From Cyanophora paradoxa CCMP329 (taxonomy: Eukaryota; Plantae; Glaucophyta), in NCBI GenBank assembly GCA_004431415.1, contig QPMI01000179.1, forward strand, positions 124,001 through 188,000: a stretch of DNA of 64,000 nucleotides. Direction: 5' to 3'. Position 1 is the stretch's first letter; each line of letters begins with the position of its first letter. Both the position numbers and the translations under genes were made by a program. The notes beneath the pieces are model-generated. The model saw only the letters and a list, made by a program, of their open reading frames with translations, was not told where the DNA came from and made no database searches. Positions 4,816 through 35,803 of this stretch are shown here, piece after piece.

Positions 4816-5069
4816 ACTCGCTCTGTAGTAAGAAAAGGCGACGTCCTCGCTCGCCAATAAGTGAAGAAAGAACTACTCAGTCCAAGGCGCCATCCTGGAA
4901 GCATGAACCATAATGCGAGACTTCAATTTAGGCGCATCGCGAGCCTTAGGTCCAACATACTCCACAAGGAAAGTAACACCTTTGCCATGAGAAACTTCCT
5001 TCAAGATAATCCAAGGGCCAGTGTAGCGAGGGGACAACTTGTCTGAACGACGAGTCGAAGACTCGTCCT
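4816..5069 (-). mobile_element. Integrase C-terminus (GPY/F motif) and 3' region of an upstream tandem family A copy
   Basis: KLSPRYTGPW...VHASRMAPW* directly precedes the LTR. Confidence 0.85.
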
Positions 5070-5690
5070 GGACCCACCAAGTCCGCCTACTCAAATCCCA
5101 GCTCCAATCTGCAATCTCGATCCTCACCACAAAAAAGATTACCATTCACGAGTTCCAAGTGATCTTACACCGGGTTCTCTTCCCTAAACTGTCATACCTT
5201 TTTCGCATCATGACTTTAACGCCATCCCAATGCCAGTCCCTCGATGCTGTCTGGCTCACCGTGGCTAAACATACTGCCAACTTGGCCCAATCCGCCTCCA
5301 CGGCTGCATTCTCTTCAATCTATCGCCTTCCCTCAATAGCAGTCATCCAACGCCGACAGCAGTGCGTCAACGAGCGCCTCCGCCAGGAACTAGCCTCCCA
5401 CACATCATCACTCTACGGCCAAATATACCGACAACGTGTCCTCAACACCCAGGCCCGATACGGGCTCCCCCTTCTTCCACACGAATATCCGAACCTCCCC
5501 TCGGGGCCCCTTACACTACAGAAAAATATTACGCTTGCCATCACGGCAGACCTGACCTCCACCTCCCATCACATCCTCACAACGTGCGACTCCTAGACAC
5601 ACGGCCTCCCCTCCCGCCGGTCCCATCTTCGACGAGAATATATTATATCAACGCAATTGTCGCCCCTCACCCTCCAACATGCCGGTCAGC
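5070..5690 (+). mobile_element. LINE ORF2 fragment (post-RT region), copy of 20171-20790
   Basis: High nucleotide identity to the LINE at 19870-23563. Confidence 0.9.
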
Positions 5691-5940
5691 GATATAGGCC
5701 AGGTACACTTCTCGAGTCAGTTAAAAGGTCGGGATCTTTTCCGGGCATCATGATCAATTCTCATGAACACCATGACCAATGCATGCATGGGTGCTGAGAT
5801 GCTCACTGCGAGCCATATTAAAACCTAGGGCCCATATCTCATACACCCCTGAGCATGCTGTTGAGCGTTCTCGAGGGAGCTGGATTTGATTGTGAAGTCG
5901 GTTTAAGACAATTGCGAGTCTGTGCTGCCTTGCAAATCGG
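5691..5940 (+). repeat. Partial ~346-bp satellite monomer
   Basis: Matches the 32025-35803 unit (gatataggccaggtacac...gcaaatcgg). Confidence 0.9.
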
Positions 5941-5965
5941 CTTCAAAAAATTCTCGGTTTCACGG

Positions 5966-8209
5966 GTACCCCCCCGGTTGGCCATCGGCCCCATTTCTGG
6001 CCTCTGGCCCACATACCTCTCGCCCCGTGTGCACGGGTGCGCTCTTTACGCAGATCCTGGCCGCCAGCTGCGCGCTTAGACGCCGATTTGTGGCTCGCCC
6101 AGCCAACGTTCAAATCTTTCCATCTCGGACAATCCTGACCTTTGCTCCACTGTACGCAGCTTTTAGAATGTCCGCCAATCCGCCCCGTGCTCCGGGGCAG
6201 CGCCGCCAGCAGCAGGGACCGCCGCCGGCTCCCCGTGCACTTGAGGGTTCTGTGGAGGTTGCCGACTTCTTCGCTGTTGATGCTCAGTCACCATGGCTTT
6301 CGGGCAATTCCCGCGTCCCTGACTACCACCACCTTCCTCGCGTCCGTGAGTTTGCCGCGTTCATGATTGGCGGCCTGCCCAAGGCAAGATTGGCGGCCTG
6401 CCCAAGTACATGCATGTTCAGACTGTCCTTGCCGATGTGCTTCGCTCTTGCAAGCCCTTCGATGATGTCTCCGTCGCCATGCGCTTCTGTATCCAGGAAG
6501 GTGTCATCGTGAATGAACCTGCAGACTTTGGCCGTGACCTCCCTGAATCTGTCCGCCTCTCGGCCTTCCAGAACCGCCTTGCTCCCATCAATTCCATGTT
6601 CTCTCAGCACCCATGGTCCTCCTCCGCGAAGCACGGCTTTGTTAAGCAGTCCACTTCTCAGGATTCCTATAGTGGTGCTACCTTCAATGCTTTCACTTAT
6701 CAGTTTTACTTTCGCTCAGTTGTTGGTGGCTTTGGCGCCTATTTAGCTCATCATCGTACCTTGTCCTCGATTTTCAACTGTACTCCAATTTCTCACCCGG
6801 CTCGTACCATGCTTTCGACCCTCACTCCTTTGCAGACCAAGCCCCATTTCCTTCAAGCATATGATGTCTTTTATGGCCTTAAGACTGTTGGTGTCTCTGA
6901 TGTGGTAGACCAATTTTTCCCGATCGAGCTTTCTTATTATCAATCTGTTCTCCGTACTACCCCTGAGTCCTCAAATGGTGCTGGCCCCTCTGGTGCTAAG
7001 CCACCCCGCTTCCTCATTCGCCTTGGCGCCCAAGCCTTCCTGGCTGAACTCAAAACGATGGCACTTAACCTTTCCAAGCCAGATTGTGTCTTCATGTCGT
7101 CGCTTCCTGTTGAGTGTGTAGAGCTGAATTCTGAGAACACCATCCCCTTCAATCCCTTCAAACTCGCTGGCTTGGATAAGTCCATTCCTTCTCCAGTTTT
7201 TCTGGAAGCTGCCTTTACTCAGCCTGTACTTGATATGGTCGCTAAGACCACTTTCACTGGCTCTGGCTCCTGCTATGATCTTCTTTGTCGCCCTGAGCTC
7301 GGTGATTTCCCTGCTGCTCATACCGATCGTGCTCATCTTAGTCTCATTTTGAAAGTGCCCTTGGCTTCTATGCTCTTCCAGAGCCTCGAGCGTCGTACTA
7401 GTTTCATCAAGCCTCGGCCCGCTCGGCCCCTCGCCATGCGTTCCCTCATGATTCTTGGCTCGGGTAACTACATTCACAAATTTTATGTGCAGACTCTTCT
7501 TCCTGAGTACTCTTCTCTTGAGTATTATTCCTCTCTTGCTCACAATGGCAAGGCTCTCGATCCTTCTTCTTACTCTTTTGCCTCTACCTCTCCTTGCTAC
7601 CAGATCCCTTGCCAGGAGCCTGACAAAAATTACAGCATTCTTGATGTCGATGAGCACACCTTCTTGTACCACTTCCATCAGGATCCCATGTTTTACTTTT
7701 TGCCTGCCTCTGTGCGCCCCCCCCTCGATGCTTTTTATGATGAGGCTCGCAAGCAGCTGGCCCTTGAGAAATCGTTTTCTGATTCATTTGAGGAAGGTCA
7801 GCATCTCGATGGCACTGGCCGTAGCCCTAGTGCTAAGCGTTCTCGCCCCTCTGATCCCTCTACTCCTTCTGGTTCTAATGACACAATTGTGTAATTTTCT
7901 TCTGTACTTCTAATCTTGAATGATTGTCTTCGGTTTCCCTCTCTCCCGTCTTCCCTAACACCCTGTCTGGCCTGTTAGGGAGCAGGTCAGTTCAGGAAGT
8001 TAGGGCTTTTTCTTTGCATGGGGACCCTACGGCCCGGGTAGGGACTTTGTGCAGCTTGTCTTTCGCAGGTTCTCGAGAGCATCTCTCATCACTACCCACG
8101 CTAGTGGGTCCCTGACGGAGCCTTGCAAGCTCCTTTAGGGGCCTCTGCGGTTCTGTCATACCCAGTCTTGCTGGCGTGGGCGTGTCTTTTACTTGCTCTC
8201 TCTCTCTCT
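5966..8209 (+). mobile_element. Non-autonomous, single-ORF (RT-less) non-LTR retroposon with (CT)7 tail and 9-bp TSD
   Basis: GTTTCACGG at 5957-5965 and 8210-8218; rejoined flanks resemble family A pol; 3' motif shared with inserts at 26461 and 42450. Confidence 0.75.
6168..7894 (+). pseudogene. Orphan ~567-aa ORF (possible ORF1/RNA-binding protein), broken by a 23-bp-period duplication
   Basis: GATTGGCGGCCTGCCCAAG at 6365-6383 and 6388-6406; removing 23 nt fuses ATG 6168 with the 494-aa ORF 6410-7894. Confidence 0.7.
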
Positions 8210-8218
8210 GTTTCACGG

Positions 8219-8861
8219 CGTTCCCATTTTGCGAATTCATGATATTATTTATCAAGAGGTTGAACAGCGGTATGGCCCTGAAGTTGCCTAATTGTTGCGA
8301 GAAATTAAAAAGATTGGAGATGAAAATGAATAGCCTGAGAAATATGCTGCTATGCATGATTTTATGCTTGGAAACATTTCTGCTGCTAAACCCAGCACTC
8401 CTAATTACAGTCCTCTTGAGCCTCACCCACCTATTATGCATAATATCAACACTGGAGATGCCAAGCCTATTGCTGAGCCCCCACGGCGACACTCCCAACG
8501 TGTACGTTCCGCCAGAATATTCTTTTCTCCGTCCCGAGTGGGGGCAGGAGCTCGCACCGGAAAGGGCTTAAAGATTACGCGAAAACATTTTCTAACCTAT
8601 ATGGTAGAGAGATGCCACGCAAGCTGCTGTCGCCCGAAGAGCGAAAGACATGGGACAAACATTTGCCTTTCGCACTTCTCCCTGTGCGCAATTATAAAAA
8701 CCCTTCAACTGGTAACACTCCTTTCGAAATGGTTTATGGACGGCCTTGTGTGTTGCCGACGGATTTGTTGGTGACTCCTGAACTTGTTCTGGATCCCACT
8801 GATGCTGGTTCATACCCGCAGCAGTTGGCTCGCAGATTTTCACAGATTTATTCTGATATCC
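8219..8861 (+). mobile_element. Degraded gypsy pol fragments (pre-RT HNINTGDAKPIAEPPRRHS; integrase WDKHLPFAL..TGNTPFEMVYGR)
   Basis: Translations paralogous to family A pol and to the integrase core end. Confidence 0.85.
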
Positions 8862-9847
8862 AAGGTTCTTGTTTGGGGTCAGTGCTCCCCCTGTTGGCCC
8901 CCAAAAATTCACAGGGGTCCACATCCATACAAATCAGTGGGCAGGGAGCCCTGGTTTGATTCAGAGCACTCTGTAAGGTTTGGATTATGCAAATGTGTGC
9001 CTCTTTTTGGGGTTCTTGTTTGGGGTCAGTGCTCCCCCTATTGCTCCCCAGAATCTCACAGGGGTCCCCACCCACACAAAACAGTGTGCAGGGAGCCCTG
9101 GGGGGTTCCAGAGCACTCTGTAAGGTTTGATTTATGCAAATGTGTGCCTCTTTTTGGGGTTCTTGTTTGGGTTCAGCGCTCCCCCTGTTGTCCCACAAAA
9201 CCTCCCGGGGTCCCCACCCACACAAAACAGTGGGCAGGGAGCCCTGGGGTGCTTCAGAGAACTCTGTCAGGTTTGAATTATGCAAAAGGGTGCCTCTTTA
9301 AGGGTTCTTGTTTGGGGTCAGTGCTCCCCCTGTTGTCCCCCAAAAATTCACAGGGGTCCCCATCCATACAAATCAGTGGGCAGGGAGCCCTGGGGTGTTT
9401 CAGAGCACTCTGTAAGGTTTGGATTATGCAAATGTGTGCCTCTTTTTGGGGTTCTTGTTTGGGGTCAGTGCTCCCCCTATTGCTCCCCAGAATCTCACAG
9501 GGGTCCCCACCCACACAAAACAGTGGGCAGGGAGCCCTGGGGTGCTTCCGAGCACTCTGTCAGGTTTGAATTATGCAAATGGGTGCCTCTTTTTGGGGTT
9601 CTTGTTTGGGGTCAGAGCTCCCCCTTTGCTCCCCAAAATCTCACAGGGGTCCATGTCCATACAAAACAGTGGGTAGGAAGCCCTGGGGGGTTCCAGAGTG
9701 AATGGGTGTCTCTTTTTGGGGTTCTTGTTTGGGGTCAGTGCTCCCCCTGTTGCGCCGTCCAAATTTCACAGGGATCCCTGTCCACACAAAGCCGTGGGTA
9801 GGAAGTCCTGGGGGGTTCCAGAGCACTCTGTCCAGTTGGCATGAGGG
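8862..9847 (+). repeat. ~147-bp satellite block (forward orientation)
   Basis: GGTTCTTGTTTGGG recurs at 8864, 9011, 9158 etc. Confidence 0.97.
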
Positions 9848-9889
9848 GTCTGCTCCGAGCCACCGCTGCTCTACACCTGCCTCACGCAG

Positions 9890-10290
9890 GGTGCAGCGGC
9901 CGCGGCTGTTCGACGGGCTTCTGTTCTGCTTGTGGGGCACATTCAAAGACCTGGTGAACAAGCAGAACGAACCCCCGTGGAAGAGCATCATCGAACTAGT
10001 TGAGGGCGCTGGTGGCTCAGTCCTGCATCTTGCAGCCAATGAGACCTATGCCACGGGCTGCATACTGCAGTGTCAATGCCCCCGGGACCTATGCCACTCG
10101 GTGCAAACGGCAGTGACGGCTGCTTACATTGTATGGTCCCGGGAAACGGTGCGGGCTGAGGGCGCCATGGATACCGAGGAGCTGCTGCGGCCCTTCCAGC
10201 TGGAGCCCCAAGTGCAGGAGCTCTTCAAGACCGCACACGTCGTCACCTCCAAGTGGCTCATCGACTCCATCTCCTGCTACGCCCTTTGCA
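9890..10290 (+). pseudogene. BARD1/BRCA1-like C-terminal BRCT domain fragment
   Basis: PRLFDGLLFCLWGTFK...IIELVEGAGGSVL...VVTSKWLIDSISCY matches the second-BRCT pattern; candidate acceptor CAG at 9887-9889. Confidence 0.75.
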
Positions 10291-10294
10291 CCGA

Positions 10295-10625
10295 CACCGC
10301 CAACTGCTCTACCTCATCATCTGCGACGCAGTCCGCCTGAGGAGGACACCCGACTGGTGGAACAAGGTGACAACCGTCGGAATCAGCAAGATCCTGACGT
10401 GGGATGGAAAACTGAAGAACGTACGACCCATCACACTGCTCGAGGTGGGGGACAAGCTCATGAAGGGGATACTGGCGGACCGCCTCCAGGACATGCTCGT
10501 GAAGCAAGGCGCGCTCAAGGGCCAGAACTCGGGTTTTCTGAAAGGAAAAACGACGGAGGACCCCCTCTTTATCCTGCAGGGAATCCTAGAGGACGCGCAC
10601 CAGGACGACAATCAGGAGGTCCGTG
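10295..10625 (+). mobile_element. LINE RT N-terminal fragment (second family)
   Basis: PDWW..NVRPITLLEV..KGQNSGF..STT-like KTTEDPLFIL..ILEDA. Confidence 0.85.
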
Positions 10626-10642
10626 TGGCAAATGGATCCAAA

Positions 10643-10830
10643 ACAATAAACTAGAGATACAACACCCATTCTCCTCATGTGAACCTGACAGAGTGCTCTG
10701 GAACACACCAGCACTTCCTACGTACTGTTTTGTGTGGAAGGGGACCCCTGTGAATTTTTGGGGGACGACAGGGGGAGCGCTGACCCCAAACAAGAAACTA
10801 GACTAGAAATAACGACACCCATTCTCCTCA
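10643..10830 (-). repeat. ~147-bp satellite fragment (reverse)
   Basis: Reverse complement of the satellite consensus. Confidence 0.9.
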
Positions 10831-10968
10831 CGCTTGCCCCGTAGTTCTCAACTCACCACTCTTTCACTGTGTAGCGAGCACGAGCGGCCTGCGTTTGAAG
10901 GACGTGCCATCCACGTTCGCTGCCGATGCTAAAGGCATGCCTTGCTCTGGCCGAAGTCATGGGGCCTT

Positions 10969-11047
<79 letters not shown>

Positions 11048-11090
11048 CGAGCGAGAGAGAGAGAGCGAGAGAGAGCGAGCGAGAGAGAGC

Positions 11091-11127
<37 letters not shown>

Positions 11128-11129
11128 CG
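10969..11129. repeat. (GA)n microsatellite with GC interruptions
   Basis: Direct reading. Confidence 0.98.
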
Positions 11130-14100
11130 ATCCCAGGGCTCCCTGCACACTGATTTGTATGGATAGGGACCCCTGTAAATTTTTGGGGGACAACAGGGGG
11201 AGCACTGACCCCAAACAAGAACCCCAAAAGAGGCACCCTTTTGCATAATTCAAACCTGACAGAGTGCTCTGAAGCACCCCAGGGCTCCCTGCCCACTGTT
11301 TTGTGTGGGTGGGGACCCGGGGAGGTTTTGTGGGACAACAGGGGGAGCGCTGAACCCAAACAAGAACCCCAAAAAGAGACACCCATTCACATTATCCAAA
11401 CCTGATTGAGTGCTCTGGAACACCCCAGGGCTCCCTGCCCACTGTTTTGTGTGGGTGGGGACCCCTGTGAGATTCTGGAGAGCAATAGGGTGAGCACTGA
11501 CCCCAAAACAAGAAACTAGAAATACAACACCCATTCTCCTAATGTGAACCTGACAGAGTGCTCTGGAACACCCCAGGGCTCCCTGCCCACTGTTTTGTGT
11601 GGGTGGGGACCCCTGTGAGATTTTGGAGAGAGCAATAGGGTGAGCGCTGACCTCAATACAAGAAACTAAAAATACAACACCCCTTTTCCTCTTGTGGACC
11701 TGGCAGAGTGCTCTGGAACCCCCCAGGGCTTACTACCCACTGTTTTGTATGGACATGGACCCCTGTGAGATTCTGGGGAGCAATAGCGGGAGCTCTGACC
11801 CCAAACAAGAACCCCAAAAAGAGGCACAAATTTGCATAAATCAAACCTGACAGAGTGCTCTGAATCGAACCAGGGCTCCCTGCCCACTGATTTGTATGGA
11901 TGTGGACCCCTGTGAATATATGTGGGACAACAGGGGGAGCGCTGAACCCAAACAAGAACCCCTAAAAGAGACACCCATTCACATTATCCAAATCTGATTG
12001 AGTGCTCTGGAACCCCCCAGGGCTCCCTGCCCACTGTTTTGTGTGGGTGGGGACCACTGTGAGATTCTGGAGAGCAATAGGGTGAGCATTGACCCCAAAC
12101 AAGAACCCCAAAAAGAGGCACACATTTGCATAATCCAAACCTGACAGAGTGTTCTGAAACATCCCAGGGCTCCCTGCACACTGATTTGTATGGATAGGGA
12201 CCCCTGTAAATTTTTGGGGGACAACAGGGGGAGCACTGACCCCAAACAAGAACCCCAAAAGAGGCACCCTTTTGCATAATTCAAACCTGACAGAGTGCTC
12301 TGAAGCACCCCAGGGCTCCCTGCCCACTGTTTTGTGTGGGTGGGGACCCGGGGAGGTTTTGTGGGACAACAGGGGGAGCGCTGAACCCAAACAAGAACCC
12401 CAAAAAGAGACACCCATTCACATTATCCAACTCTGATTGAGTGCTCTGGAACCCCCCAGGGCTCCCTGCACACTGTTTTGTGTGGGTGGGGACCCCTGTG
12501 AGATTCTGGGGAGCAATAGGGGGAGCACTGACCCCAAACAAGAACCCCAAAAAGAGGCACACATTTGCATAAATCAAACCTGACAGAGTGCTCTGAATCA
12601 AACCAGGGCTCCCTGCCCACTGATTTGTGTGGCTGGGGACACCTGTGAATTTTTGGGGACAACAGGGGGAGCACTGACCCCAAACAAGAACCCAAAACAG
12701 GCACCCATTTGCATAATTCAAACCTGACAGAGTGCTCTGAAGCACCCCAGGGCTCCCTGCCCACTGTTTTGTGTGGGTGGGGACCCCAGGAGGTTTTGTG
12801 GGACAACAGGGGGAGCGCTGAACCCAAACAAGAACCCCAAAAAGAGACACCCATTCACATTATCCAACTCTGATTGATTGCTCTGGAACACCCCAGGGCT
12901 CCCTGCACACTGGTTTGTGTGGGTGGGGACCCCTGTGAGATTTTGGAGAGGCAACTGGGGGAAGCCCTGACCCCAAAACAAGCAACAAAAAATAAAACAC
13001 TCATTCTCCTCATGTGAACTTGACAGAGTGCTCTGGAATACCCCAGGGCTTCATGCCCACTGTTTTGTGTGGATGGGGACCCCTGTGAGATTTTGAAGGG
13101 GCAACTGGGGGAAGCGCTGACCTCAATACAAGAAACTAAAAATACAACACCCATTTTCCTCTTGTGGACCTGGCAGAGTGCTCTGGAACCCCCCAGGGCT
13201 TACTACCCACTGTTTTGTATGGACATGGACCCCTGTGAGATTCTGGGGAGCAATAGCGGGAGCTCTGACCCCAAACAAGAACCCCAAAAAGAGGCACAAA
13301 TTTGCATAAATCAAACCTGACAGAGTGTTCTAAATCAAACCAGGGCTCCCTGCCCACTGATTTGTATGGATGTGGACCCCTGTGAATATATGTGGGACAA
13401 CAGGGGGAGCACTGACCCCAAACAAGAACCCCAAAAGAGGCACCCATTTGCATAATTCAAACCTGACAGAGTGCTCTGGAACACCCCAGGGCTCCCTGCC
13501 CACTGTTTTGTGTGGGTGGGGACCCCGGGAGGTTTTGTGGGACAACAGGGGGAGCGCTGAACCCAAAAAAGAACCCCAAAAAGAGACACCCATTCACATT
13601 ATCCAAACCTGATTGAGTGCTCTGGAACACCCCAGGGCTCCCTGCCCACTGTTTTGTGTGGGTGGGGACCACTGTGAGATTCTGGAGAGCAATAGGGTGA
13701 GCACTGACCCCAAACAAGAACCCCAAAAAGAGGCACACATTTGCATAATCCAAACCTGACAGAGTGTTCTGAAACATCCCAGGGCTCCCTGCACACTGAT
13801 TTGTATGGATAGGGACCCCTGTAAATTTTTGGGGGACAACAGGGGGAGCACTGACCCCAAACAAGAACCCCAAAAGAGGCACCCTTTTGCATAATTCAAA
13901 CCTGACAGAGTGCTCTGAAGCACCCCAGGGCTCCCTGCCCACTGTTTTGTGTGGGTGGGGACCCCAGGAGGTTTTGTGGGACAACAGGGGGAGCGCTGAA
14001 CCCAAACAAGAACCCCAAAAAGAGACACCCATTCACATTATCCAACTCTGATTGAGTGCTCTGGAACCCCCCAGGGCTCCCTGCACACTGTTTTGTGTGG

Positions 14101-15090
14101 GTGGGGACCCCTGTGAGATTCTGGGGAGCAATAGGGGGAGCACTGACCCCAAACAAGAACCCCAAAAAGAGGCACAAATTTGCATAAATCAAACCTGACA
14201 GAGTGCTCTGAATCAAACCAGGGCTCCCTGCCCACTGATTTGTGTGGCTGGGGACACCTGTGAATTTTTGGGGGACAACAGGGGGAGCACTGACCCCAAA
14301 CAAGAACCCCAAAACAGGCACCCATTTGCATAATTCAAACCTGACAGAGTGCTCTGAAGCACCCCAGGGCTCCCTGCCCACTGTTTTGTGTGGGTGGGGA
14401 CCCCAGGAGGTTTTGTGGGACAACAGGGGGAGCGCTGAACCCAAACAAGAACCCCAAAAAGAGACACCCATTCACATTATCCAACTCTGATTGATTGCTC
14501 TGGAACACCCCAGGGCTCCCTGCACACTGGTTTGTGTGGGTGGGGACCCCTGTGAGATTTTGGAGGGGCAACTGGGGGAAGCCCTGACCCCAAAACAAGC
14601 AACTAAAAATAAAACACTCATTCTCCTCATGTGAACTTGACAGAGTGCTCTGGAATACCCCAGGGCTTCATGCCCACTGTTTTGTGTGGATGGGGACCCC
14701 TGTGAGATTTTGAAGGGGCAACTGGGGGAAGCGCTGACCTCAATACAAGAAACTAAAAATACAACACCCATTTTCCTCTTGTGGACCTGGCAGAGTGCTC
14801 TGGAACCCCCCAGGGCTTACTACCCACTGTTTTGTATGGACATGGACCCCTGTGAGATTCTGGGGAGCAATAGCGGGAGCTCTGACCCCAAACAAGAACC
14901 CCAAAAAGAGGCACAAATTTGCATAAATCAAACCTGACAGAGTGTTCTAAATCAAACCAGGGCTCCCTGCCCACTGATTTGTATGGATGTGGACCCCTGT
15001 GAATATATGTGGGACAACAGGGGGAGCACTGACCCCAAACAAGAACCCCAAAAGAGGCACCCATTTGCATAATTCAAACCTGACAGAGTG
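11130..15090 (-). repeat. ~147-bp satellite array with 1617-bp (11-mer) higher-order repeat
   Basis: Private variant TGATTGATTG at 12871 and 14488; ORF-track pairs 12855/14472 and 13123/14740. Confidence 0.95.
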
Positions 15091-15114
15091 TACAAAACTT
15101 CCTGCCCCTTGAGG

Positions 15115-15360: not shown

Positions 15361-16311
15361 TCAAAAAGGCGAGCAAGTAAATATCCGACAGTGCTCTAGT
15401 TCGTGAAGCCCAGACCATGTAACAACACCATCTCTTTGATTTGGCAAGTCAACTGAACGGTAAGAACACACGTGCCTCTTACCTCCCATTATGCAGGAGC
15501 GACGCAAATGATCTAAGCTCCAGAATGCAGGGTGAAGGTCCGAATCATTGAATGGATGCCTGAAATCTGGAATGTAGCGAGCACCATACGCTCGTCCTCC
15601 CCATTTTTGACGCACATACTCACAGCTATCTGCTCGAAATGACATCTGGAGAGCATCAGCTGCTGAATCAATACCCATGGATCTTGCAACCCATGTGCCT
15701 GCTAAACCTGGCACTGAAACATTTCGATGCATGAAAAATCCACCCTCTATTACAAGGGACATTCCGTTCGCAAAGAGACGGGCCTCGTACTCAACGTCTT
15801 CACAATACACTGGAAAAATGTTTTCATCAAAAATACCAAGGCGGTGAACCGCTGCAGCCGTCAATGCGAACGCTGAGAAGTGAATGTTTGACAGAATCAT
15901 AGCGACATTCGAATCTTCTAGAACAACTCTATCTACACGTGCTGCAAAATCCTCAAGAGATCCTTTGGGAAACCAGGAATCGCCGTTGACAACAAGCCAC
16001 CATGCTGAATGTGGAGATCTAGACAGCATAACATTCCACGCCCCAGCGCAGCCGATATTCTCTGCAATGTGAATTATAGTGGCCCGGGGATGAATCGTGG
16101 CTACGGTCTCACGTGCAGACCATAACGACGAATCGCTTCCAGAAGTAAGGACAATAAGGTCATCAAAATCGCAGTCGATTGACTGGACAGCGCGAATCAA
16201 GAATTCGCCCTCGAATGACGCACTAATCAGTATTGCAGGAACTCGGCACGCCCTCGTGTTGACAGACGAGAGAAGCACGAGCGCGAGAACGAGTCTGAAG
16301 GGTGAGCACAT
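15361..16311 (-). CDS. Glycosyltransferase, GT2-like (GT-A fold), N-terminal signal/anchor, intronless, 316 aa
   Basis: NIGCAGAWN, WWLVVNGD, FDENIFPVYCEDVEY motifs; hydrophobic N-terminus; intact ORF. Confidence 0.85.
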   Translation of the reverse strand: MCSPFRLVLALVLLSSVNTRACRVPAILISASFEGEFLIRAVQSIDCDFDDLIVLTSGSDSSLWSARETVATIHPRATIIHIAENIGCAGAWNVMLSRSPHSAWWLVVNGDSWFPKGSLEDFAARVDRVVLEDSNVAMILSNIHFSAFALTAAAVHRLGIFDENIFPVYCEDVEYEARLFANGMSLVIEGGFFMHRNVSVPGLAGTWVARSMGIDSAADALQMSFRADSCEYVRQKWGGRAYGARYIPDFRHPFNDSDLHPAFWSLDHLRRSCIMGGKRHVCSYRSVDLPNQRDGVVTWSGLHELEHCRIFTCSPF

Positions 16312-19806: not shown

Positions 19807-19869
19807 TGTCTGCTTAATGCAAAATGGCAGCACCAACACCAATAGAACTAATTAAATGTCTGCTTAATC

Positions 19870-22800
19870 CCGCCGGCCCCTGCCCCAAAGTCTCTGTGCT
19901 CGCCTATGCCGATGACACAACCATGCTTGCCAGCTCGGCTCAGGGTCTCCAACATATGCTCGACTGGCTGTCTGAATTCTTACACATTCATGGCATGAAC
20001 CTAAACGCAAAAAGACGGAAATATTTCACTGGAAGCCACCATGATCCGAAGAGCCCACCAATAGCAAATATTACGTCCGGATTGGTGGCACTCGGGCTGA
20101 GGTTGGCCACGTTCTCTCCCCCACCTCGCCCTTCCGGGTCCTTGGCGTCCAGTTCACTGCCAACCTGTCTTGGACCCACCAAGTCCGCCTACTCAAATCC
20201 CAGCTCCAGTCAGCAATCTCGATCCTAGCCACGAAGAAGATTACCGTTCACGAATTCCAAGTGATTTTACACCGGGTTCTATTTCCTAAACTGGCATACC
20301 CCCTCCGTATCATGACCTTAACGCCATCCCAATGTCAATCCCTCGACGCTGTCTGGCTCAGCGCGGCCAAACACACTGCCAACTTGGCCCAATCCGTCTC
20401 CACGGCTGCATTCTCTTCCATTTATCGCCTTCCCTCCATAGCAGTCATCCAACGCCAACAGCAGTGCGTCGACGAGCGCCTCCGCCAGGAACTCGCCTCC
20501 CACACATCATCACTCTACGGCCAGATATACCGGCAACGTGTCCTCGACACCCAGGCCCGGTACGGGCTCCCTCTTCTCCCCCACGAATATCCGAACCTCC
20601 CCTCGGGGCCTCTTACACTACAAAAAAATATCACGCTTGCCATCACGGCAGACCTGACCTCCACCTCCCATCACATCCTCACAACGTGCGATTCCTGGAC
20701 GCACGGCCTCCCCTCCCGTCGGTCCCATCTCCGACGCGAGTATATTATATCATCGCAATTGACGCCCCTCACCCTCCAACAAGCCGGACAACGACTCTAT
20801 CGCTGCGGCCTCCTCACAATCCGTGACATTACGGCCTCTGACGGCTCCCTTGCTGACTGGTCCCTCCTCTAGAGTCATGGCCGTGTCCCGGCATACTACA
20901 AACGTGCCCCCTCCTGGTGGGACGCGGTCCGCGAAGAACTCTCTCTCCCCCGCCTTTCCACCCGGTCCCCTTTCCTCCCCTGATACCCTCTGCCCCCGCC
21001 GCCCTCCATCCCAGACATTCGTCGCTCTCTCCAAGCCAATGCCGTCCTTGCGGGACTCAAAATTGGTGACTTTGTCTGGACATCCCAAGGCCTAGTTGGC
21101 CGCGTCGTAGGGAAACCCCCTATCCCGGACGAAAACCCGGACGAACTGGCTTCCGAGGACTCCGACGCGGACCCTGACTGCTCCCGAGATTCAGAGTATA
21201 ACTATGGGGTGGAACTCGTCCATTACTGCCTCATCCCGTACGATGAACTTTCCGCGCGCGACCCCCGTCTATCGGCTCTTGAACTCGACCCCGCCTGGCG
21301 TGAACGCAAACTGGAATTCCAATTCTGCCCTCACCCAAAGTATTGCGGCTCTGAACAGCTTCATCGCGAACTGGGCCTCTCTACGACTGCTTGCCGATGG
21401 GTCGAGTACGCATCTCACGTTCGGCGAATTCCAGCAAGCTCCTCGTGCGAATCGAAGGGCTGGTCCCCGAGCCTCTCCAACCTAAATAGGCCGGCTCCCA
21501 CCTGCTCCCGGCAGCTGCCCGACTCCACCTCTGCTTTCACATGTTCCCACTCCAGAGGGCAGCAGACCACCCGCTCTCAGCCCACACGAGCAGCTAAAAA
21601 GGCCCGCCTTGACCCCTCCTCCGACACCTCCTCGGCCCAATATGACCCCGAACTTCCCCCTCCCAACCTCCCCCGCGAAATCACACATATTGGCTTCATC
21701 GATCTCTGGCTCCGGGAAACTGACTGGTGGGACTCTTTCCGCGCGGAGGCCCAGGCCACCAATGTTGCCCTCGAGCGACGCCCACGTCCGATGACCCCTG
21801 CCTCACAAGCCGACCGTGAATTCTATGAATCTTCGGCCGGGCTCGACTTTGTCTTCGCCACCTCTCGAGCCCTCTTTGCCGAGCTCTGCCCTACGCTCTG
21901 TGCCCTAAACTCCCCGCCCCCTCCCCCCGGCCCTACTCCCCGGGTAATATACACGGACGCCAGCACACAAAAACAGGGCTCTGCCTCTGTCCGAACCACC
22001 TACGCTGGCCTTGCACCTCTCGAAAATAATCCCGACCTGCCTGACAAAATCGAGTTTGCCCGCCGCCTCCCCGGCGTCCAACACAACGTGAACCTGGGAG
22101 AGCTAGCAGGCGCGATCTCCGCAGCATTCACGTACTTCGGGCCCGTGGGCGGGAAAATTATCACGGACAGTCAGAACACTATCGGAGCCCTGACAGCTTT
22201 CGCCTTTCGAGACCCTTCATCCTTCTCCCATCCCATCAATTTCCGCACCCTGCTCCGCTGAGAAGACGGGGCCTTTCTCCTCAACGCTCGAACGCAATAC
22301 GCCATCCGTATTGCCCAAGACCCGAACTTCCAAGTCACGCTACAATGGGTCCCCTCTCACCAACCAAAGACCATTCCGCGGCCGACTCCACCGGCTCCGA
22401 CCCCAACGACGACCCGCCGCCCGGCCCCCTCCTCCCCCCGCCGACCCCGCATCCCCCTCAGCGGACCAGCTGCCCTCCTACCTACTGCCCCGCAGACGTT
22501 CCCTGCCTCGGCTCCTTACCACTATATTGGTGGAATGGACATCCCTGATGCCCGACTCCTTTTTTCGGACGACTCCTCCCCGCGCCTCCCCCCGTCACTC
22601 TTCTCGTCCCTCTTCCCGCCTCGCCGGCACCTTGGCACATATATTCTAGCTGACAGCCCCGCCGACTACAATTTCCTCCGATGCCAAGCGGACCTCGTTG
22701 ACTATGTAGATGCCTCCGAGACTACCAACACCCACCTGGCCCTTGACCTCGTCCCCCTCGCGTCCGCCAGACTTGAACGCGCCTTCACGGCGGCGGAAAC

Positions 22801-23563
22801 CGTCATCTGGAACCGCTGCATCCGACTTCCCAAAGATCATACTCTTTTTCTCTCCGACGAACACCTGACCATTGTCTCGGACTGCGACATCCTCCGCGCC
22901 TACTCCGCTTTCCTTGAAGCCTTAGGACGCAGAGACATCACCCACAACATCTCCTTCCAGTGCTGCTCCCCTCCCAACCCAATCTTCCTTCAACCACTCC
23001 CCGAGGATGCCCCTGATGCTGACTACCCTGATCCCGGGCCTACAAGGAAACTTGTCCTCGACTACTACTTAGCCCATCCTAGGGCTTCCGGCCCCGCCTG
23101 GAATTTCTACCAAACTTCCCTCTGCAAACCTGCTGTCCCTGCCGACTGCGACACGCCTCTTCCCGCCTGGTACTGGGACGAGGATCTCACACTCGCCCCC
23201 ACCTCCCAGACTGAGGCTGGCACCCCTCTGGTTGCGTACCACCGTTGCGACCCTGGCATGTGGGGCATCCCTATTTCCTCCCTGATCGCAGAACAATGGG
23301 CACGGGGACCCGCCCTGTCCTGCCCGCACTGCCACCCCACTCCCGCTCCGCCTGGCCCCCCACCCACGTTCCCTCTCCGCGACCAAACCGGCGCCCTTCC
23401 TGTTTTATTCGAACGCTATGGACGCCGAGCCATCCCCTACTCAGCTGCCATCGATCCTGACGGCCCCCGGTATGATCGCCGAGTACTTCCCCTCCTCGAC
23501 GGCATAAAATCTCGCCTGGCCGCCCTTAAAGCGGCCCCCCTCTCCCTCATCAACCCCAACCCT
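19870..23563 (+). mobile_element. Degenerate LINE ORF2: RT C-terminal half, RNase H and long C-terminal region
   Basis: LAYADD at ~19900; RNase H VIYTDAS..GELAGAISA..IITDSQ..LQWVPSH (21945-22360); C-rich sense strand; stops and frameshifts. Confidence 0.88.
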
Positions 23564-23565
23564 AG

Positions 23566-25255
23566 GAAACAGGGGAGCACTCACCCCAAACAAGAACACC
23601 AAAAAGAGACACCCATTCACATCATCCAAACCTGATAGAGTGTTCTGGAACACTCCAGCAATCCCTGCACACAGTTTTTTGTGGGTGGGGACCCCTGTGA
23701 GATTCCAGGGGCGATAGGGGGAGCACTGAGCCCAAACAAGAGATCAGCAAAGCGACACCCCTCCTCGCCATGCACACCTTACAGAGTGCTTCAGACCACC
23801 CAAGGGCTCCCTGCACACTGTTTTGTGTGGGCTGGGACCCCTGTGACATTTTGGGGGGGCACCTGGGGGAGGCGCTGACCCCAAAACAAGAAAAAAGAAA
23901 TACAACACCCATTCTCCTCATGTGAACCTGACAGAGTGCTCTGGAACACTCCAAGGCTCCCTACCCAGTGTTTTGTATGGATGGGGACCACTGTGAATAT
24001 TTGTGGGATTACAGGGGGAGCGCTAACCCAAAACAAGAAACTTGAAATAACGAGACCCATTCTCCTCATGCCAACCGGACAGAGTTCTGTGGAACCCCCC
24101 AGGGCTTCCTACCCACGGCTTTGTGTGGATGGGGACTCCTGTGACATTTTGGGGGGCAACAGGGGGAGCACTGACCCCAAACAAGAACACCAAAAAGAGA
24201 CACCCATTCACCTCATCCACACCTGATAGAGTGTTCTGGAACACTCCAGCAATCCCTGCACACTGTTTTGTGTGGGTGGGGACCCCTGTGAGATTTCGGA
24301 GGGGCAACTGGGGGACGTGCTGACCCCAAAACAAGAAACTAGAAAAACAACACCCATTCTCCTCATGTGAACCTGACAGAGTGCTCTGGAACACTCCAAG
24401 GCTCCCTTCCCAGTGTTTTGTATGGATGGGGACCACTGTGAATATTTGTGGGATAACAGGGGGAGCGCTGACCCCAAACAAGAACCTAGAAATAACGACA
24501 CCCATTCTCCTCATGCCAACTGGACAGAGTTCTGTGGAACCCCCCAGGGCTTCCTACCCACGGCTTTGTGTGGACAGGGACTCCTGTGACATTTTGGGGG
24601 GCAACAGGGGGAGCACTGATCCCAAACAAGAACACCAAAGAGAGACACCCATTCACCTCATCCAAACCTGATAGAGTGTTCTGGAACACTCCAGCAATCC
24701 CTGCACACTGTTTTGTGTGGGTGGGGACCCCTTTGAGATTCCAGGGGGCGATAGGGGGAGCACTGAGCCCAAACAAGAGATCAGCAAAGCGACACCCCTC
24801 CTCGCCATGCACACCTTACAGAGTGCTTCAGACCACCCAAGGGCTCTTTGCAACACTGTTTTGTGTGGGTGGGGACCCCTGTGAGATTTCGGAGGGGCAA
24901 CTGGGGGACGTGCTGACCCCAAAACAAGAAAAAAGAAATACAACACCCATTCTCCTCATGTGAACCTGACAGAGTGCTCTGGAACACTCCAAGGCTCCCT
25001 ACCCAGTGTTTTGTAAGGATGGGGACCACTGTGAATATTTGTGGGATAACAGGGGGAGCGCTGACCCCAAACAAGAACCTAGAGATAACGACACCCATTC
25101 TCCTCATGCCAACCGGACAGAGTTCTCTGGAACCCCCCAGGGCTTCCTACCCACGGCTTTGTGTGGACGGGGACTCCTGTGACATTTTGGGGGGCAACAG
25201 GAGGAGCACTGGCCCCAAACAAGAACACCAAAAAGAGACACCCATTCACATCATC
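23566..25255 (-). repeat. ~147-bp satellite subfamily 2 (reverse)
   Basis: Monomer variants shared with 25690-28836. Confidence 0.95.
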
Positions 25256-25689
25256 TCCCCCACGAATATCCGAACCTCCCCTCGGGGCCTCTTACACTAC
25301 AAAAAAATATCACGCTTGCCATCACGGCAGACCTGACCTCCACCTCCCATCACATCCTCACAACGTGCGATTCCTGGACGCACGGCCTCCCCTCCCGTCG
25401 GTCCCATCTCCGACGCGAGTATATTATATCATCGCAATTGACGCCCCTCACCCTCCAACAAGCCAGACAACGACTCTATCGCTGCGGCCTCCTCACAATC
25501 CGTGACATTACGGCCTCTGACGGCTCCCTTGCTGACTGGTCCCTCCTCTAGAGTCATGGCCGTGTCCCGGCATACTACAAACGTGCCCCCTCCTGGTGGG
25601 ACGCGGTCCGCGAAGAACTCTTTCTCCCCCGCCTTTCCACCCGGTCCCCTTTCCTCCCCTGATACCCTCTGCCCCCGCCGCCCTCCATC
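25255..25689 (+). mobile_element. Near-identical duplicate of LINE segment ~20575-21010
   Basis: Direct comparison shows only a few substitutions. Confidence 0.95.
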
Positions 25690-28600: not shown

Positions 28601-28836
28601 AGCACTCTGTCAGGTTCACATGAGGAGAATGGGTGTTGTATTTCTAGTTTCTTGTTTTGGGGACAGCAGGTCCCCCAGTTGCCCCTCCGAAATCTCACAG
28701 GGGTCCCTACCCACACAATACAGTGTGCAGGGAGCCCTTGGGTGGTCTGGAGCACTCTCGAAGATGTGCATGACGAGGAGGGGTGTCTCTTTGCTGATCT
28801 CTTGTTTGGGCTCAGTGCTCCCCCTATCGCCCCTGG
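25690..28836 (+). repeat. ~147-bp satellite with 591-bp (4-mer) higher-order repeat
   Basis: ORF-track periodicity 26542/27133/27724/28315. Confidence 0.96.
26461..26487 (-). mobile_element. 27-bp 5'-truncated (TTC)n-tailed retroposon insertion, 8-bp TSD CCCACCCA
   Basis: This HOR unit is 626 bp instead of 591; insert matches the 3' end of the 42450 insertion. Confidence 0.85.
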
Positions 28837-30016
28837 AACAAGAGATCAGCAAAGAGACACCCCTCCTCGCCATGCACATCTTCGAGAGTGCTCCAGACCA
28901 CCCAAGGGCTCCCTGCACACTGTTTTGTGTGGGCGGGGACCCCTGTGACATTTTGGAGGGGCAAGTGGGGGATGTGCTGACCCCAAAACAAGAAACTAGA
29001 AATACAACACCCATTCTCCTCATGTGAACCTGACAGAGTGCTCTGGAACACACCAGCACTCCCTACTTACTATTTTGTGTGGACGGGGACCCCTGTAAAC
29101 GTTTGGGGGATGACAGGGGGAGCGCAGAAAATCGATTTCCTTTCTGATCAACCATGTGCACCAACAACAGAAGTGCCAACAAGTGTGGAGGCATCCAGCG
29201 ACTGTAGGACTGTCCCAGAACGTGCGCACATTCTGGTTTTGGAACACGACGTGGAAGTTCCGGCTGGCCAACAAGTAAAGGTGTATTTGCAGACAAGAAA
29301 TTACTTTTCCGACTGCAAAGGCTACCTGGAGAACTTCCACCAATTAGATTCAAATCCTGAGATCAAAATAACGAATATCTTGAACCGTTGTCGAGGCGGG
29401 AGGTTATTTGCTCACGTGGCCAACCTTAGAAGCCGTTTTGATGCGCCACATGTGATTTTGCGGAAAGGCATGAAAGTAGCCCGATTTGTACCACATACAC
29501 TCGGTAGACAAACTCAGCAGAACTTTCCCAAAGTGTATGACTGTGGAATCGCATTGAATTATGATCAGTTGGGAAACGGAACATACCTTACAGAGTGCTC
29601 CAGACCACCTGAGGGCTCCCTGCACACTGTTTTGTGTGGGTGGGAACCCCTGTGAGATTCCAGGGGACGATAGGGGGAGCACACAGCCCAAATAAGAGAT
29701 CAGCAAAGAGACACCCCTCCTCGCCATGCACATCTTAGAGAGTGCTCCAGACAACCCAAGGGCTCCCTGCACACTGTTTTGTGTGGGTGGGGATGCCTGT
29801 GAGTTTGGAGGGGCCACTGGGGGAAGCGCTCCCCCTGTCGCTCACCCAAAATCTCACAGGGGTCCCCAGACACATAAGACAGTGGCAGGGAGCCCTTCGG
29901 GGTTCCAGAGCACTCTGTCAGCTTTGCATGATGCAAATTGGTGTCTCTTTTTGGGGTTCTTGTTTGGGGTCAGTGCTCCCCCTGTTGCTCGCCCCAAATC
30001 TCCTAGGGGTCCCCAC
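28837..30016. repeat. ~147-bp satellite pieces with orientation flips, interrupted by a gypsy fragment
   Basis: Reverse at 28837-29125 and 29585-29825, forward at 29826-30016. Confidence 0.85.
29126..29585 (+). mobile_element. Gypsy pol fragment (protease-RT spacer, family A-related)
   Basis: DCKGYLE..NPEIK..CRGGR..NLRSRFD..LRKG aligns with ORF 1483-3183. Confidence 0.85.
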
Positions 30017-35000: not shown

Positions 35001-35803
35001 AGTGTTGGCAATTGGGGCCTGCTATTGCTTGGCAAGGCAAGAGCACCTTTTCGGCGCTTTCTGCAATCAAAATCAAATTTAGTGCCCATGATATAGGCCA
35101 GGTACACCTCTCCGTCAGTACAAAAGGTCGGGATCTTGCAGGCATCATGATCAATTCTCATGATCATCATGAACACTGCATGCATGGGTGCTGAGATGCT
35201 CAGTGCGAGCCATATTGAAACCTAAGGCCCATATCTCATACACCCCTGAGCATGCTGTTGGGGGTTCTCAAGGGTGCTGGATTTGATAGTGAAACCGGTT
35301 GATAGCAGTTGCGAGTCTTTGCTGCCATGCAAATCAGCACAAATGAAGTGTTGGCAATTGGGGCCTGCTATTGCTGGCAAGGCAAGAGCACCTTTTTGGC
35401 GCTTTCCGCAATCATAATCAAATCTAGTGCCCGTGATATAGGCCAGGTACACTTCTCCATCAGTACAAAAGGTCGGGATCTTGCAGGCATCATGATCAAT
35501 TCTCATGATCATCATGAACACTGCATGCATGGGTGCTGAGATGCTCAGTGCGAGCCATATTGAAACCTAGGGCCCATATCTCATACACCCCTGAGCATGC
35601 TGTTGGGGGTTCTCAGGGGCGCTGGATTTGATTGTAAAGTCGGTTCAAGGCCGATGCAAGTCTGTGCTGCCATGCAAATCGGCACAAATGAAGTGTTGGC
35701 AATTGGGGCCTGCTATTGCTTGGCAAGGCAAGAGCACCTTCTTGGCGCTTTCCGCAATCAAAATCAAATCTAGTGCCTGTGATATAGGCCAGGTACACCT
35801 CTC
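32025..35803 (+). repeat. ~346-bp satellite array; 886-bp higher-order unit (2 monomers plus a 195-bp partial)
   Basis: CCTAGGGCCCATATCTC periodicity; ORF-track 32466/33352/34238. Confidence 0.96.

What the first reader, a model, noticed from the sequence alone, without database searches (positions are those of the whole stretch)
5957..8218. RT-less 2.24-kb retroposon carrying a single orphan ORF, structured 3' UTR, (CT)n tail and 9-bp TSD
Seen: GTTTCACGG flanks both sides of 5966-8209. Rejoining the flanks gives ttctcggtttcacggcgttcccatt, which resembles family A pol (ttctcgaatttacatgcagttcccata, FSNLHAVPI), so this is a clean insertion into a gypsy fragment. Inside are a ~200-nt 5' UTR, one ~567-aa ORF with no RT, endonuclease, integrase or recombinase motif, a 315-nt 3' UTR and (CT)7. 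Established: a TSD plus a simple-repeat tail is the signature of target-primed reverse transcription; ORF1-only non-autonomous LINEs exist (mammalian HAL1). Inference: a protein-coding parasite of a LINE that supplies its own ORF1-like protein. Two segments (FMIGGLPKY, FKLAGLDKS) look vaguely like RRM strand 1. Alternative: a retrotransposed RNA-virus segment, e.g. a capsid gene.
Basis: partly seen in the sequence, partly recalled or inferred. Interest (0 to 1): 0.85.

Follow-up and report, generated by a model that had tools for sequence, protein, structure and literature searches.

The report
RT-less retrocopy with one orphan gene
A 2.2-kb piece of DNA, copied from an RNA, was pasted into an old gypsy element; it carries one protein gene with no known relatives, a strongly folded tail region and no copying enzyme of its own, so it probably borrows the machinery of a LINE, but only this one copy could be examined.

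Summary
Window 5966-8209 (2,244 bp, + strand) is a clean insertion flanked by an exact 9-bp duplication, GTTTCACGG. Rejoining the flanks restores colinearity with a paralogous gypsy pol.

The insert is laid out like an mRNA:
- a 202-nt leader;
- one ORF, broken once by a frame-shifting 23-bp tandem duplication;
- a 315-nt trailer that ends in (CT)7.

It has no LTRs, TIRs, RT, endonuclease or integrase. The ORF is really coding (third-position A 6%). It has no detectable relative in Pfam, PDB, 5.8 billion word-indexed proteins, 1.84 billion HMMER-scanned representatives, metagenome or viral contigs. The trailer is the only part of the element with exceptional RNA structure (z about -5 to -6).

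My best reading is a young retrocopy of an RT-less, protein-coding non-LTR retroposon, made by target-primed reverse transcription and mobilised in trans by a LINE. This is the HAL1 / HeT-A layout with a SINE-like "stringent" 3' end.

Not supported or not testable here:
- the RRM or ORF1p resemblance;
- whether it belongs to a multi-copy family;
- a partner LINE;
- the host organism.

No second copy exists in the 64 kb, and no genome of the host was searchable. Interest is moderate.

The parts
5690..5945 (.). Partial unit of the 345-bp satellite directly upstream of the target site (context, not part of the element)
   Evidence: 88-89% identity to units at 32.0-35.8 kb and 40.75-40.97 kb
5946..5956 (+). 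Left stub of the target: gypsy pol-like sequence before the duplicated 9-mer
   Evidence: It aligns contiguously with family A pol across the junction
5957..5965 (.). Target-site duplication, copy 1 (GTTTCACGG)
   Evidence: Counting the 5 nt before it, the repeat is 13/14 identical to 8205-8218
5966..8209 (+). Whole inserted element, 2,244 bp, with no LTR or TIR
   Evidence: It is unique in the window by blastn, tblastn and nhmmer
5966..6167 (+). 5' leader, 202 nt, 60% G+C. It is open in the ORF's frame but lacks the ORF's codon-position pattern
   Evidence: Coding score is -0.09 per nt in the ORF frame, against +0.004 and +0.045 for the ORF pieces. Fold z is -0.7
6168..6386 (+). ORF piece A (73 codons from the ATG): an N-terminal region rich in Pro, Arg and Gln
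6362..6407 (+). 23-bp tandem duplication (two units, 21/23 identical) that shifts the reading frame; the only lesion seen in the ORF
   Evidence: (family D1)
6389..7894 (+). ORF piece B (501 codons plus TAA); an orphan protein
   Evidence: Third-position composition is A 6%, T 43%, C 33%. The stop-free run is 514 codons against a maximum of 414 in 2,000 shuffles. No homologue was found
7271..7336 (+). CX4C-X10-HX4H motif 1 (possible zinc-binding site; a lead only)
   Evidence: Two or more such motifs occur in 5 of 5,000 shuffles, but the pattern was defined after seeing it
7595..7672 (+). CX4C-X14-HX4H motif 2 (possible zinc-binding site; a lead only)
7631..7783 (+). The only confidently modelled unit: three beta-strands followed by a long helix
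   Evidence: AF2 on the 87-residue segment gives core pLDDT 84-87. Foldseek gives no significant match; the best E is 0.78
7895..8195 (+). Structured 3' UTR: several long hairpins and no AATAAA
   Evidence: MFE is -123.6 kcal/mol. z is -5.25 on the sense strand and -3.09 on the antisense strand. It is the only outlier among 315-nt windows of the element, where the others range from -1.4 to +2.3. No Rfam family matches
8196..8209 (+). (CT)7 tail at the 3' end
8210..8218 (.). Target-site duplication, copy 2 (GTTTCACGG)
8219..8502 (+). Right part of the target: a degenerate gypsy pol fragment (the region between protease and RT)
   Evidence: tblastn with family A pol gives 45% identity, E 6e-21

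Best explanation
Window 5966-8209 is a recent retrocopy of an RNA of about 2.2 kb, organised as 5' leader, one ORF, a strongly folded 3' UTR and a (CT)n tail. It was inserted into a dead gypsy pol fragment by target-primed reverse transcription, using a reverse transcriptase and endonuclease supplied in trans by an autonomous LINE.

I take the RNA to be that of a non-autonomous, protein-coding non-LTR retroposon. The layout is that of HAL1 or HeT-A: its own ORF1/Gag-position protein and no pol. The 3' end looks like that of 'stringent' LINE/SINE pairs, where the partner's RT would recognise the structured 3' UTR and the short repeat tail rather than a poly(A). This copy can no longer make the full protein, because a 23-bp tandem duplication shifts the frame after codon 73.

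Shown:
- the insertion, the TSD and the tail;
- the absence of RT, endonuclease, integrase, LTR and TIR;
- that the ORF is coding;
- the exceptional 3' UTR structure on the sense strand;
- the pyrimidine-rich, A-poor sense strand.

Inferred:
- TPRT as the mechanism;
- dependence on a LINE;
- recognition through the 3' UTR;
- that the protein acts as the element's RNA-binding or coat protein;
- that it is a family rather than a one-off.

I put about 0.8 on 'TPRT-type retrocopy of an RT-less RNA'. I put about 0.5 on the more specific 'member of a protein-coding non-autonomous retroposon lineage'.
For: - There is an exact 9-bp TSD. The rejoined flanks are colinear with a paralogous gypsy pol, and the 9-mer maps once in that paralog.
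- There are no terminal repeats of either kind.
- A simple-repeat tail abuts the 3' TSD.
- The layout is mRNA-like, with a real ORF: third-position A 6%, and a stop-free run beyond all 2,000 shuffles.
- The leader lacks the codon signal, so the ATG at 6168 is the likely true start.
- Only the 3' UTR has outlying structure, z -5.3 to -5.9 and stronger on the sense strand.
- The whole sense strand, UTRs included, is A-poor (16% A) and pyrimidine-rich. The window's LINE-like element shares the pyrimidine bias at third positions, 65-73% against 52-58% in gypsy and the putative host ORFs.
- A LINE-like RT-RNase H element is present in the same window, so a source of RT exists in this genome.
- Precedents exist for pol-less, protein-coding non-LTR elements: HAL1 (PMC5753468) and HeT-A (PMC5537684).
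Against: - Only one copy is available, so a family, a 5'-truncation series and differing TSDs could not be shown.
- No LINE in the window shares the 3' UTR or the tail. The window's LINE copy is cut off by satellite before its 3' end.
- The protein shows no similarity to any ORF1p or Gag type, RRM or zinc knuckle.
- The protein model is of low confidence.
- No Rfam LINE 3' element matches.
- No relative of the ORF exists among 1.84 billion representative proteins. That fits a lineage-specific TE gene, but it equally fits other orphan origins.
Confidence: 0.5

Rival explanations
1. It is a one-off internal deletion derivative of an autonomous LINE. The ORF would be that LINE's ORF1, the 3' UTR and tail would be the LINE's own, and ORF2 was lost in this copy or in its immediate source only.
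For: The footprint is the same as for the best explanation. HAL1-type elements are known to arise repeatedly from L1 by loss of ORF2 (PMC5753468). Only one copy was seen.
Against: The ORF ends in a natural-looking Ser/Pro-rich tail and a stop, followed by a compact, highly structured UTR. There is no remnant of ORF2 coding signal in the 315 nt (3' UTR coding scores are negative in all frames). There is no similarity to the window's LINE.
Confidence: 0.2
2. It is a retrocopy of a host, lineage-specific gene transcript. It may be chimeric: the LINE RT would have started on a LINE 3' end carrying the (CT)n tail and then switched template to an mRNA.
For: The layout is mRNA-like, with an A at -3 of the ATG. 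The ORF is an orphan. The element is single-copy in the window.
Against: There is no poly(A) tract and no AATAAA in the trailer. The A-poor strand bias runs through the UTRs and the ORF alike and resembles the LINE more than the putative host ORFs. The structured 3' UTR is unusual for a plain mRNA.
Confidence: 0.12
3. It is an endogenised segment or mRNA of a non-retroviral RNA virus, for example a capsid gene, reverse-transcribed and inserted by a LINE.
For: It is a single ORF with a basic, disordered N-terminus, a long structured non-polyadenylated 3' UTR and no cellular homologue.
Against: There is no match to any viral protein by sequence or by fold in BFVD (that model was poor). The termini are not complementary. 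The strand composition resembles the resident LINE.
Confidence: 0.07
4. It is an ordinary 5'-truncated LINE copy. The ORF would be the C-terminal, post-RT part of a much longer ORF2 or ORF3, and the '5' UTR' would be coding sequence.
For: The ORF's frame stays open through the whole 202-nt leader and beyond the element's 5' end. The window's LINE has more than 700 codons downstream of its RT.
Against: An open frame of 67 codons has about a 20% chance in sequence this A-poor (my calculation from the composition). The leader lacks the ORF's codon-position pattern. The ATG is followed by a typical disordered N-terminus. There is no RT, RNase H or CCHC trace and no similarity to the LINE's post-RT ORFs.
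Confidence: 0.06
5. It is a non-autonomous DNA transposon with 9-bp TSDs (MULE-like) that has captured a gene.
For: A 9-bp TSD is typical of Mutator-like elements (my own knowledge).
Against: There are no terminal inverted repeats. There is a one-sided simple-repeat tail and a strand-asymmetric, transcript-like layout.
Confidence: 0.03

Closest known systems
HAL1 (half-L1) of mammals
   Same: It is a non-LTR retroposon that keeps one ORF in the ORF1 position, has no ORF2 or RT, and depends on a LINE in trans (PMC5753468).
   Different: The HAL1 ORF is recognisably L1 ORF1p and the element ends in poly(A). Here the protein matches no ORF1p family and the tail is (CT)7 after a structured UTR.
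HeT-A telomeric retrotransposon of Drosophila
   Same: It is a non-LTR element that encodes only a Gag-position protein, lacks pol, has a long 3' UTR, and uses RT from another element (PMC5537684).
   Different: HeT-A transposes to chromosome ends without a nick or TSD and ends in oligo(A). This element sits internally with a 9-bp TSD, and its protein has no Gag or zinc-knuckle hit.
Stringent-type LINE/SINE partnerships (for example eel UnaL2/UnaSINE1; from my own knowledge)
   Same: In those pairs a structured 3' UTR plus a short tandem-repeat tail is the part the partner RT recognises. The 3' UTR here is the only strongly structured part, and the tail is a short repeat.
   Different: SINEs are short, non-coding and have Pol III heads. 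This element is 2.2 kb, protein-coding and has no tRNA, 5S or 7SL head. The Rfam search, whose library I recall includes a UnaL2 3' element family, gave no match at all in 5500-8700. No partner was found.
Kibi (Tx1/L1-group LINEs that target (TC)n microsatellites)
   Same: They are APE-type LINEs associated with TC repeats (PMC3812793). Here a (CT)7 tail abuts the target, and the 5 nt before the TSD read TCTCG.
   Different: Kibi elements carry an RT and sit inside (TC)n arrays. This target is gypsy pol sequence, not a microsatellite.
Processed pseudogenes and retrogenes
   Same: They are intronless UTR-ORF-UTR copies with a TSD.
   Different: They carry poly(A) tails. Here there is none.

Membership tests
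TPRT-generated non-LTR retroposon insertion | Target-site duplication of variable length flanking the insert | tested here: met
   There is an exact 9-bp GTTTCACGG on both sides, and the paralog shows a single copy.
TPRT-generated non-LTR retroposon insertion | 3' end is poly(A) or a short simple repeat; no LTRs or TIRs | tested here: met
   (CT)7 lies at 8196-8209 and there are no terminal repeats.
TPRT-generated non-LTR retroposon insertion | Dispersed copies with a common 3' end, variable 5' truncation and different TSDs | tested here: inconclusive
   There is no second copy in 64 kb, none in metagenome or viral contigs, and no host genome was available.
Non-autonomous partner of a stringent-type LINE | An autonomous LINE in the same genome shares the 3' UTR end and tail repeat | tested here: inconclusive
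   nhmmer of the 3' UTR against the window found nothing. The only LINE-like copy in the window is cut off before its 3' end.
Non-autonomous partner of a stringent-type LINE | Conserved structured 3' element | tested here: inconclusive
   The single-sequence structure signal is strong (z -5.3 to -5.9), but there are no homologues for a covariation test, and no Rfam family matches.
HAL1-like ORF1-only LINE derivative | The ORF is homologous to the ORF1p of the parent LINE (coiled coil, RRM, CTD or zinc knuckles) | tested here: not met
   Pfam finds no family at E<=1 for the whole protein or E<=10 for segments. PDB by sequence finds nothing. The parent LINE's ORF1 was not available.
HAL1-like ORF1-only LINE derivative | No ORF2 or RT between the ORF and the 3' UTR | tested here: met
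   The stop is at 7892-7894, followed by 315 nt without coding signal.
   There is no RRM hit, even for 6389-6700 alone at E<=10. The AF2 model of that part has pLDDT of about 35 and no strands.
SINE | Pol III head derived from tRNA, 5S or 7SL; short; non-coding | tested here: not met
   There are no tRNA or Rfam hits. The element is 2.2 kb with a 567-codon ORF.
Processed pseudogene or retrogene | Poly(A) tail; intron-containing parent gene | tested here: not met
   There is no A tract and no AATAAA. A parent gene was not testable.
Endogenous non-retroviral RNA-virus element | Detectable homology to a viral protein | tested here: not met
   Searches found nothing; the fold search used a low-confidence model.
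LTR retrotransposon or solo LTR | Terminal direct repeats, TG..CA ends, 4-6-bp TSD | tested here: not met
   The ends are GT..CT and the TSD is 9 bp.
MULE-type DNA transposon | 9-10-bp TSD plus terminal inverted repeats | tested here: not met
   The TSD length fits, but there are no TIRs.

The most novel reading that the evidence does not exclude
It is the first seen copy of a 'coding SINE'. That would be a multi-copy, RT-less non-LTR retroposon mobilised through a structured 3' UTR and a (CT)n tail shared with a stringent-type LINE. It would carry its own lineage-specific protein with two CX4C...HX4H motifs, unrelated to any known ORF1p or Gag type, in place of the partner's ORF1p.
Probability: 0.3. 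Interest if true: 0.65.

Novelty: new variant of a known kind. Interest (0 to 1): 0.45.

Why it matters
Non-autonomous retroposons are usually non-coding (SINEs) or obvious halves of a known LINE (HAL1). An RT-less element that keeps a protein of its own and is recognised through a structured, non-poly(A) 3' end would raise a question: what must a parasite of a LINE supply for itself, RNA packaging or nuclear import for example, and what can it borrow? The orphan protein would be a new candidate retroelement RNA-binding or coat protein. If instead it proves to be a single deleted LINE copy or a retrogene, it is an ordinary by-product of LINE activity in a satellite-rich, TE-nested region.

Tried and rejected
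Homology of the ORF. Nothing was found in:
- Pfam, NCBIfam and PHROGs;
- PDB by sequence;
- the word-indexed 5.8-billion-protein search;
- the full HMMER scan of 1.84 billion representatives;
- the exact-product look-up;
- metagenome and viral contigs by peptide patterns;
- metagenome and viral contigs by a 24-mer from the 3' end.

Structure.
- The single-sequence AF2 model of the 501-residue piece was poor (pLDDT 37.6).
- Foldseek against BFVD and PDB gave no match at E<=0.001, and TM-scores were below 0.2.
- The C-terminal 87 residues folded better (core pLDDT 84-87). They are a generic three-strand-plus-helix unit with no significant match. Polo-box, SH3-like and chromo-shadow folds appear only at E of 0.8 or worse. 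I drop the chromo-shadow idea, which came from a remembered sequence, as unsupported.

Other checks that led nowhere.
- Rfam found nothing in 5500-8700 at E<=1, or in the whole window at gathering scores. No tRNA was found.
- The dinoflagellate spliced-leader relic in the leader is no better than chance.
- Similarity to the window's LINE ORFs: none.
- The second (CT)n tract, at 10968-11127 on the minus strand, is a microsatellite inside satellite DNA and not another element's tail.
- The antisense 235-codon ORF at 6971-7678 has no family and is expected opposite a pyrimidine-rich ORF.

Host identification failed.
- The best relatives of the intact gypsy pol are only about 32% identical (chelicerates).
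- A METTL24/FkbM-like ORF is 35-45% identical to rotifer, green-alga and dinoflagellate proteins.
- Nothing suggests a human contig.
Full report
**Observation.** The 9-mer GTTTCACGG occurs exactly twice in the 64-kb window, at 5957-5965 and 8210-8218. Two occurrences are not rare in themselves: 10 of 100 shuffles give two or more. Their position is what counts.
- When 5966-8218 is removed, the flanks align as one uninterrupted stretch to a paralogous gypsy pol ('family A', about 1500-1590 on the minus strand). The score is 40 against 21 +/- 4 for shuffles, and the 9-mer region maps only once in that paralog.
- The downstream flank 8248-8502 translates into a pol fragment 45% identical to family A (E 6e-21).
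- Only about 20 nt on the 5' side (5946-5965) are gypsy-like. Positions 5690-5945 are a partial unit of the 345-bp satellite that fills 32.0-35.8 kb. Positions 5065-5692 are a fragment of a LINE-like element.
- So the element landed in a nested patchwork of satellite and dead transposons. The site is a clean insertion with a 9-bp target-site duplication.
- Including the preceding 5 nt, the repeat is 13/14 (TCTC[G/T]GTTTCACGG). The CT tail therefore has a little microhomology with the target. That may be chance.

**Anatomy.** The insert is 2,244 bp.
- It has no terminal direct or inverted repeats.
- It reads like a transcript: a 202-nt G+C-rich leader (5966-6167), an ATG at 6168 with A at -3, an ORF ending at TAA 7892-7894, and a 315-nt trailer ending in (CT)7 (8196-8209) that abuts the second TSD copy.
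- There is no poly(A) and no AATAAA.
- The ORF is in two frame pieces, 6168-6386 (73 codons) and 6389-7894 (501 codons plus stop). A 23-bp tandem duplication at 6362-6384 / 6385-6407 shifts the frame. This is the only lesion I see.
- Together with the perfect TSD, this points to a young insertion.
- I searched the two pieces separately.

**Is the ORF real, and where does it start?**
- Third codon positions are 6% A, 43% T, 33% C and 18% G. Second positions are 27% A.
- The stop-free run of 514 codons exceeds all 2,000 composition-matched shuffles, whose maximum is 414 even in this stop-poor, pyrimidine-rich sequence.
- The ORF's frame stays open through the whole leader. That raised the possibility of a 5'-truncated longer ORF. 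However, the leader lacks the ORF's codon-position pattern: -0.09 bits per nt, like the 3' UTR, against positive and frame-specific values for both ORF pieces.
- By my estimate from the composition, 67 stop-free codons have about a 20% chance here.
- I therefore take 6168 as the true start, with modest confidence.

**What the protein is.** It has no detectable relative.
- The sequence, exact-product and contig searches all returned nothing; they are itemised under Tried and rejected.
- There is no RT, endonuclease, RNase H, integrase, recombinase, L1 ORF1p, zinc-knuckle or RRM signal.
- The single-sequence AlphaFold model is poor (pLDDT 37.6). Foldseek against viral and PDB libraries gives nothing credible.
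- The C-terminal 87 residues fold with a confident core (pLDDT 84-87) into three strands plus a long helix. That unit is generic and matches nothing significantly.
- Descriptively, the N-terminus is rich in Pro, Arg and Gln and looks disordered. The C-terminus is Ser/Pro-rich with a KRSRP patch.
- Four of the nine cysteines form two CX4C...HX4H motifs (7271-7336 and 7595-7672). Two or more such motifs arise in 5 of 5,000 shuffles, but I defined the pattern after seeing it. This hints at zinc-dependent nucleic-acid binding and is no more than a lead.

**The 3' UTR.** On the sense strand, 7895-8209 folds to -123.6 kcal/mol, z = -5.25. The antisense strand gives z = -3.09 and the leader z = -0.7. 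In a sliding scan of the whole element, the two windows over the trailer are the only outliers (z -4.2 and -5.9). All other windows lie between -1.4 and +2.3. No Rfam family matches.

**Strand composition.** The whole sense strand, UTRs included, is A-poor (16%) and pyrimidine-rich. The LINE-like element at 19.8-23.6 kb shares the third-position pyrimidine bias (65-73%). That element has an RT motif (RVT_1, E 3e-5), a weak RNase H match (E 0.01) and the by-eye motifs YADD and YTDAS..DSQ. The gypsy elements and the putative host ORFs do not share the bias (52-58%). This is weak evidence that the element shares the lifestyle of the resident LINEs rather than that of host genes.

**Mechanism.** The simplest account of these features together is target-primed reverse transcription of an RT-less RNA by a LINE enzyme acting in trans. 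The features are the TSD, the one-sided simple-repeat tail, the absence of terminal repeats, the transcript-like polarity and a structured 3' end.
- By analogy with stringent LINE/SINE pairs (my own knowledge), the structured trailer and the repeat tail would be what the partner's RT recognises.
- The protein would serve the element's own RNA, in packaging or nuclear import, as ORF1p or Gag does.
- Precedents for pol-less, protein-coding non-LTR elements are HAL1 (PMC5753468) and HeT-A (PMC5537684).
- LINEs associated with TC repeats exist (Kibi, PMC3812793). The target here is not a microsatellite.

**What could not be settled.** The element is unique in the window by blastn, tblastn and nhmmer. 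The window's LINE copy is cut off by satellite before its 3' end. No collection available to me holds this genome. The best public relatives of its intact gypsy pol are about 32% identical. A METTL24/FkbM-like ORF gives only 35-45% identity to a taxonomically mixed set.

My probabilities are:
- about 0.8 that this is a TPRT-type retrocopy of an RT-less RNA;
- about 0.5 for a protein-coding non-autonomous retroposon lineage;
- about 0.2 for a one-off ORF2-deleted LINE;
- about 0.12 for a host-gene or chimeric retrocopy;
- about 0.07 for an endogenised RNA-virus gene;
- about 0.06 for a 5'-truncated LINE tail;
- about 0.03 for a TIR-less DNA transposon.

**Verdict.** The retroposition reading is well supported. 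The 'ORF1-like/RRM' and 'parasite family' parts are unproven. If the family is real, it is a new variant of a known kind: the HAL1 / HeT-A logic with a SINE-like 3' end and an orphan protein. Interest is moderate (0.45). A single BLASTN against the source genome would decide most of it.

Noticed in passing
window 19824-23540 (+): A degenerate LINE-like element. It has an RT motif (LAYADDTTMLASS; RVT_1 E 3e-5), a thumb-like ORF, a weak RNase H match (E 0.01; YTDAS...DSQ) and a further 366-codon ORF of unknown function containing CPHCH. The sense strand is very C-rich (third positions 47-53% C). The 147-bp satellite cuts it off at about 23541 before any 3' tail. It is a candidate source of RT in this genome.
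   Followed up: partly
window 5065-5692, 20167-20794, 25254-25473: Three copies of the same LINE segment (91-92% identical) all end at the same LINE coordinate (equivalent to 20794). In two of them the segment is followed by different satellites (the 345-bp type at 5690 and the 147-bp type after 25473). This shared breakpoint is unexplained.
   Followed up: no
window 35824-40606 (+), flanked by 32025-35816 and 40751-41107: An apparently intact gypsy element with a 1,229-codon pol carrying protease, RT, RNase H, integrase and an SH3-like C-terminal domain. It sits inside an array of the 345-bp satellite. Its best public relatives are only about 32% identical. A second, inverted gypsy pol lies at 40904-44438 (-).
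   Followed up: partly
window 8864-15100, 23541-29000, 57900-63900: Large arrays of roughly 147-bp and 124-bp satellites in both orientations, with higher-order periods (about 295, 445 and 591 bp). They spuriously generate ORFs of 170-260 codons.
   Followed up: no
window 10968-11127: A 160-bp (AG)n/(CGAG)n microsatellite ((CT)n on the minus strand) at the edge of the 147-bp satellite array. It is not the tail of another copy of the element.
   Followed up: yes
window 47660-55250 (+): A tandem repeat of about 1.34 kb carrying copies of a 113-205-codon ORF (starts at 47894, 49225, 50567, 51909 and 54632; MSHDVILGRDYCV...) with no Pfam family. An overlapping 163-codon antisense ORF is also repeated.
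   Followed up: no
window 55890-56510 (+): An ORF with a Methyltransf_22 (FkbM/METTL24-like) domain (E 6e-20), possibly a host exon. Its nearest proteins are 35-45% identical and taxonomically mixed (bdelloid rotifers, Cymbomonas, Symbiodinium, Vitrella).
   Followed up: partly
window 15361-16311 (-): A 316-codon ORF with a weak glycosyltransferase family 2 match (E 4e-5), lying between satellite arrays.
   Followed up: no
window 6971-7678 (-): A 235-codon ORF antisense to the element's ORF. It has no family and is probably a by-product of the pyrimidine-rich sense codons.
   Followed up: partly
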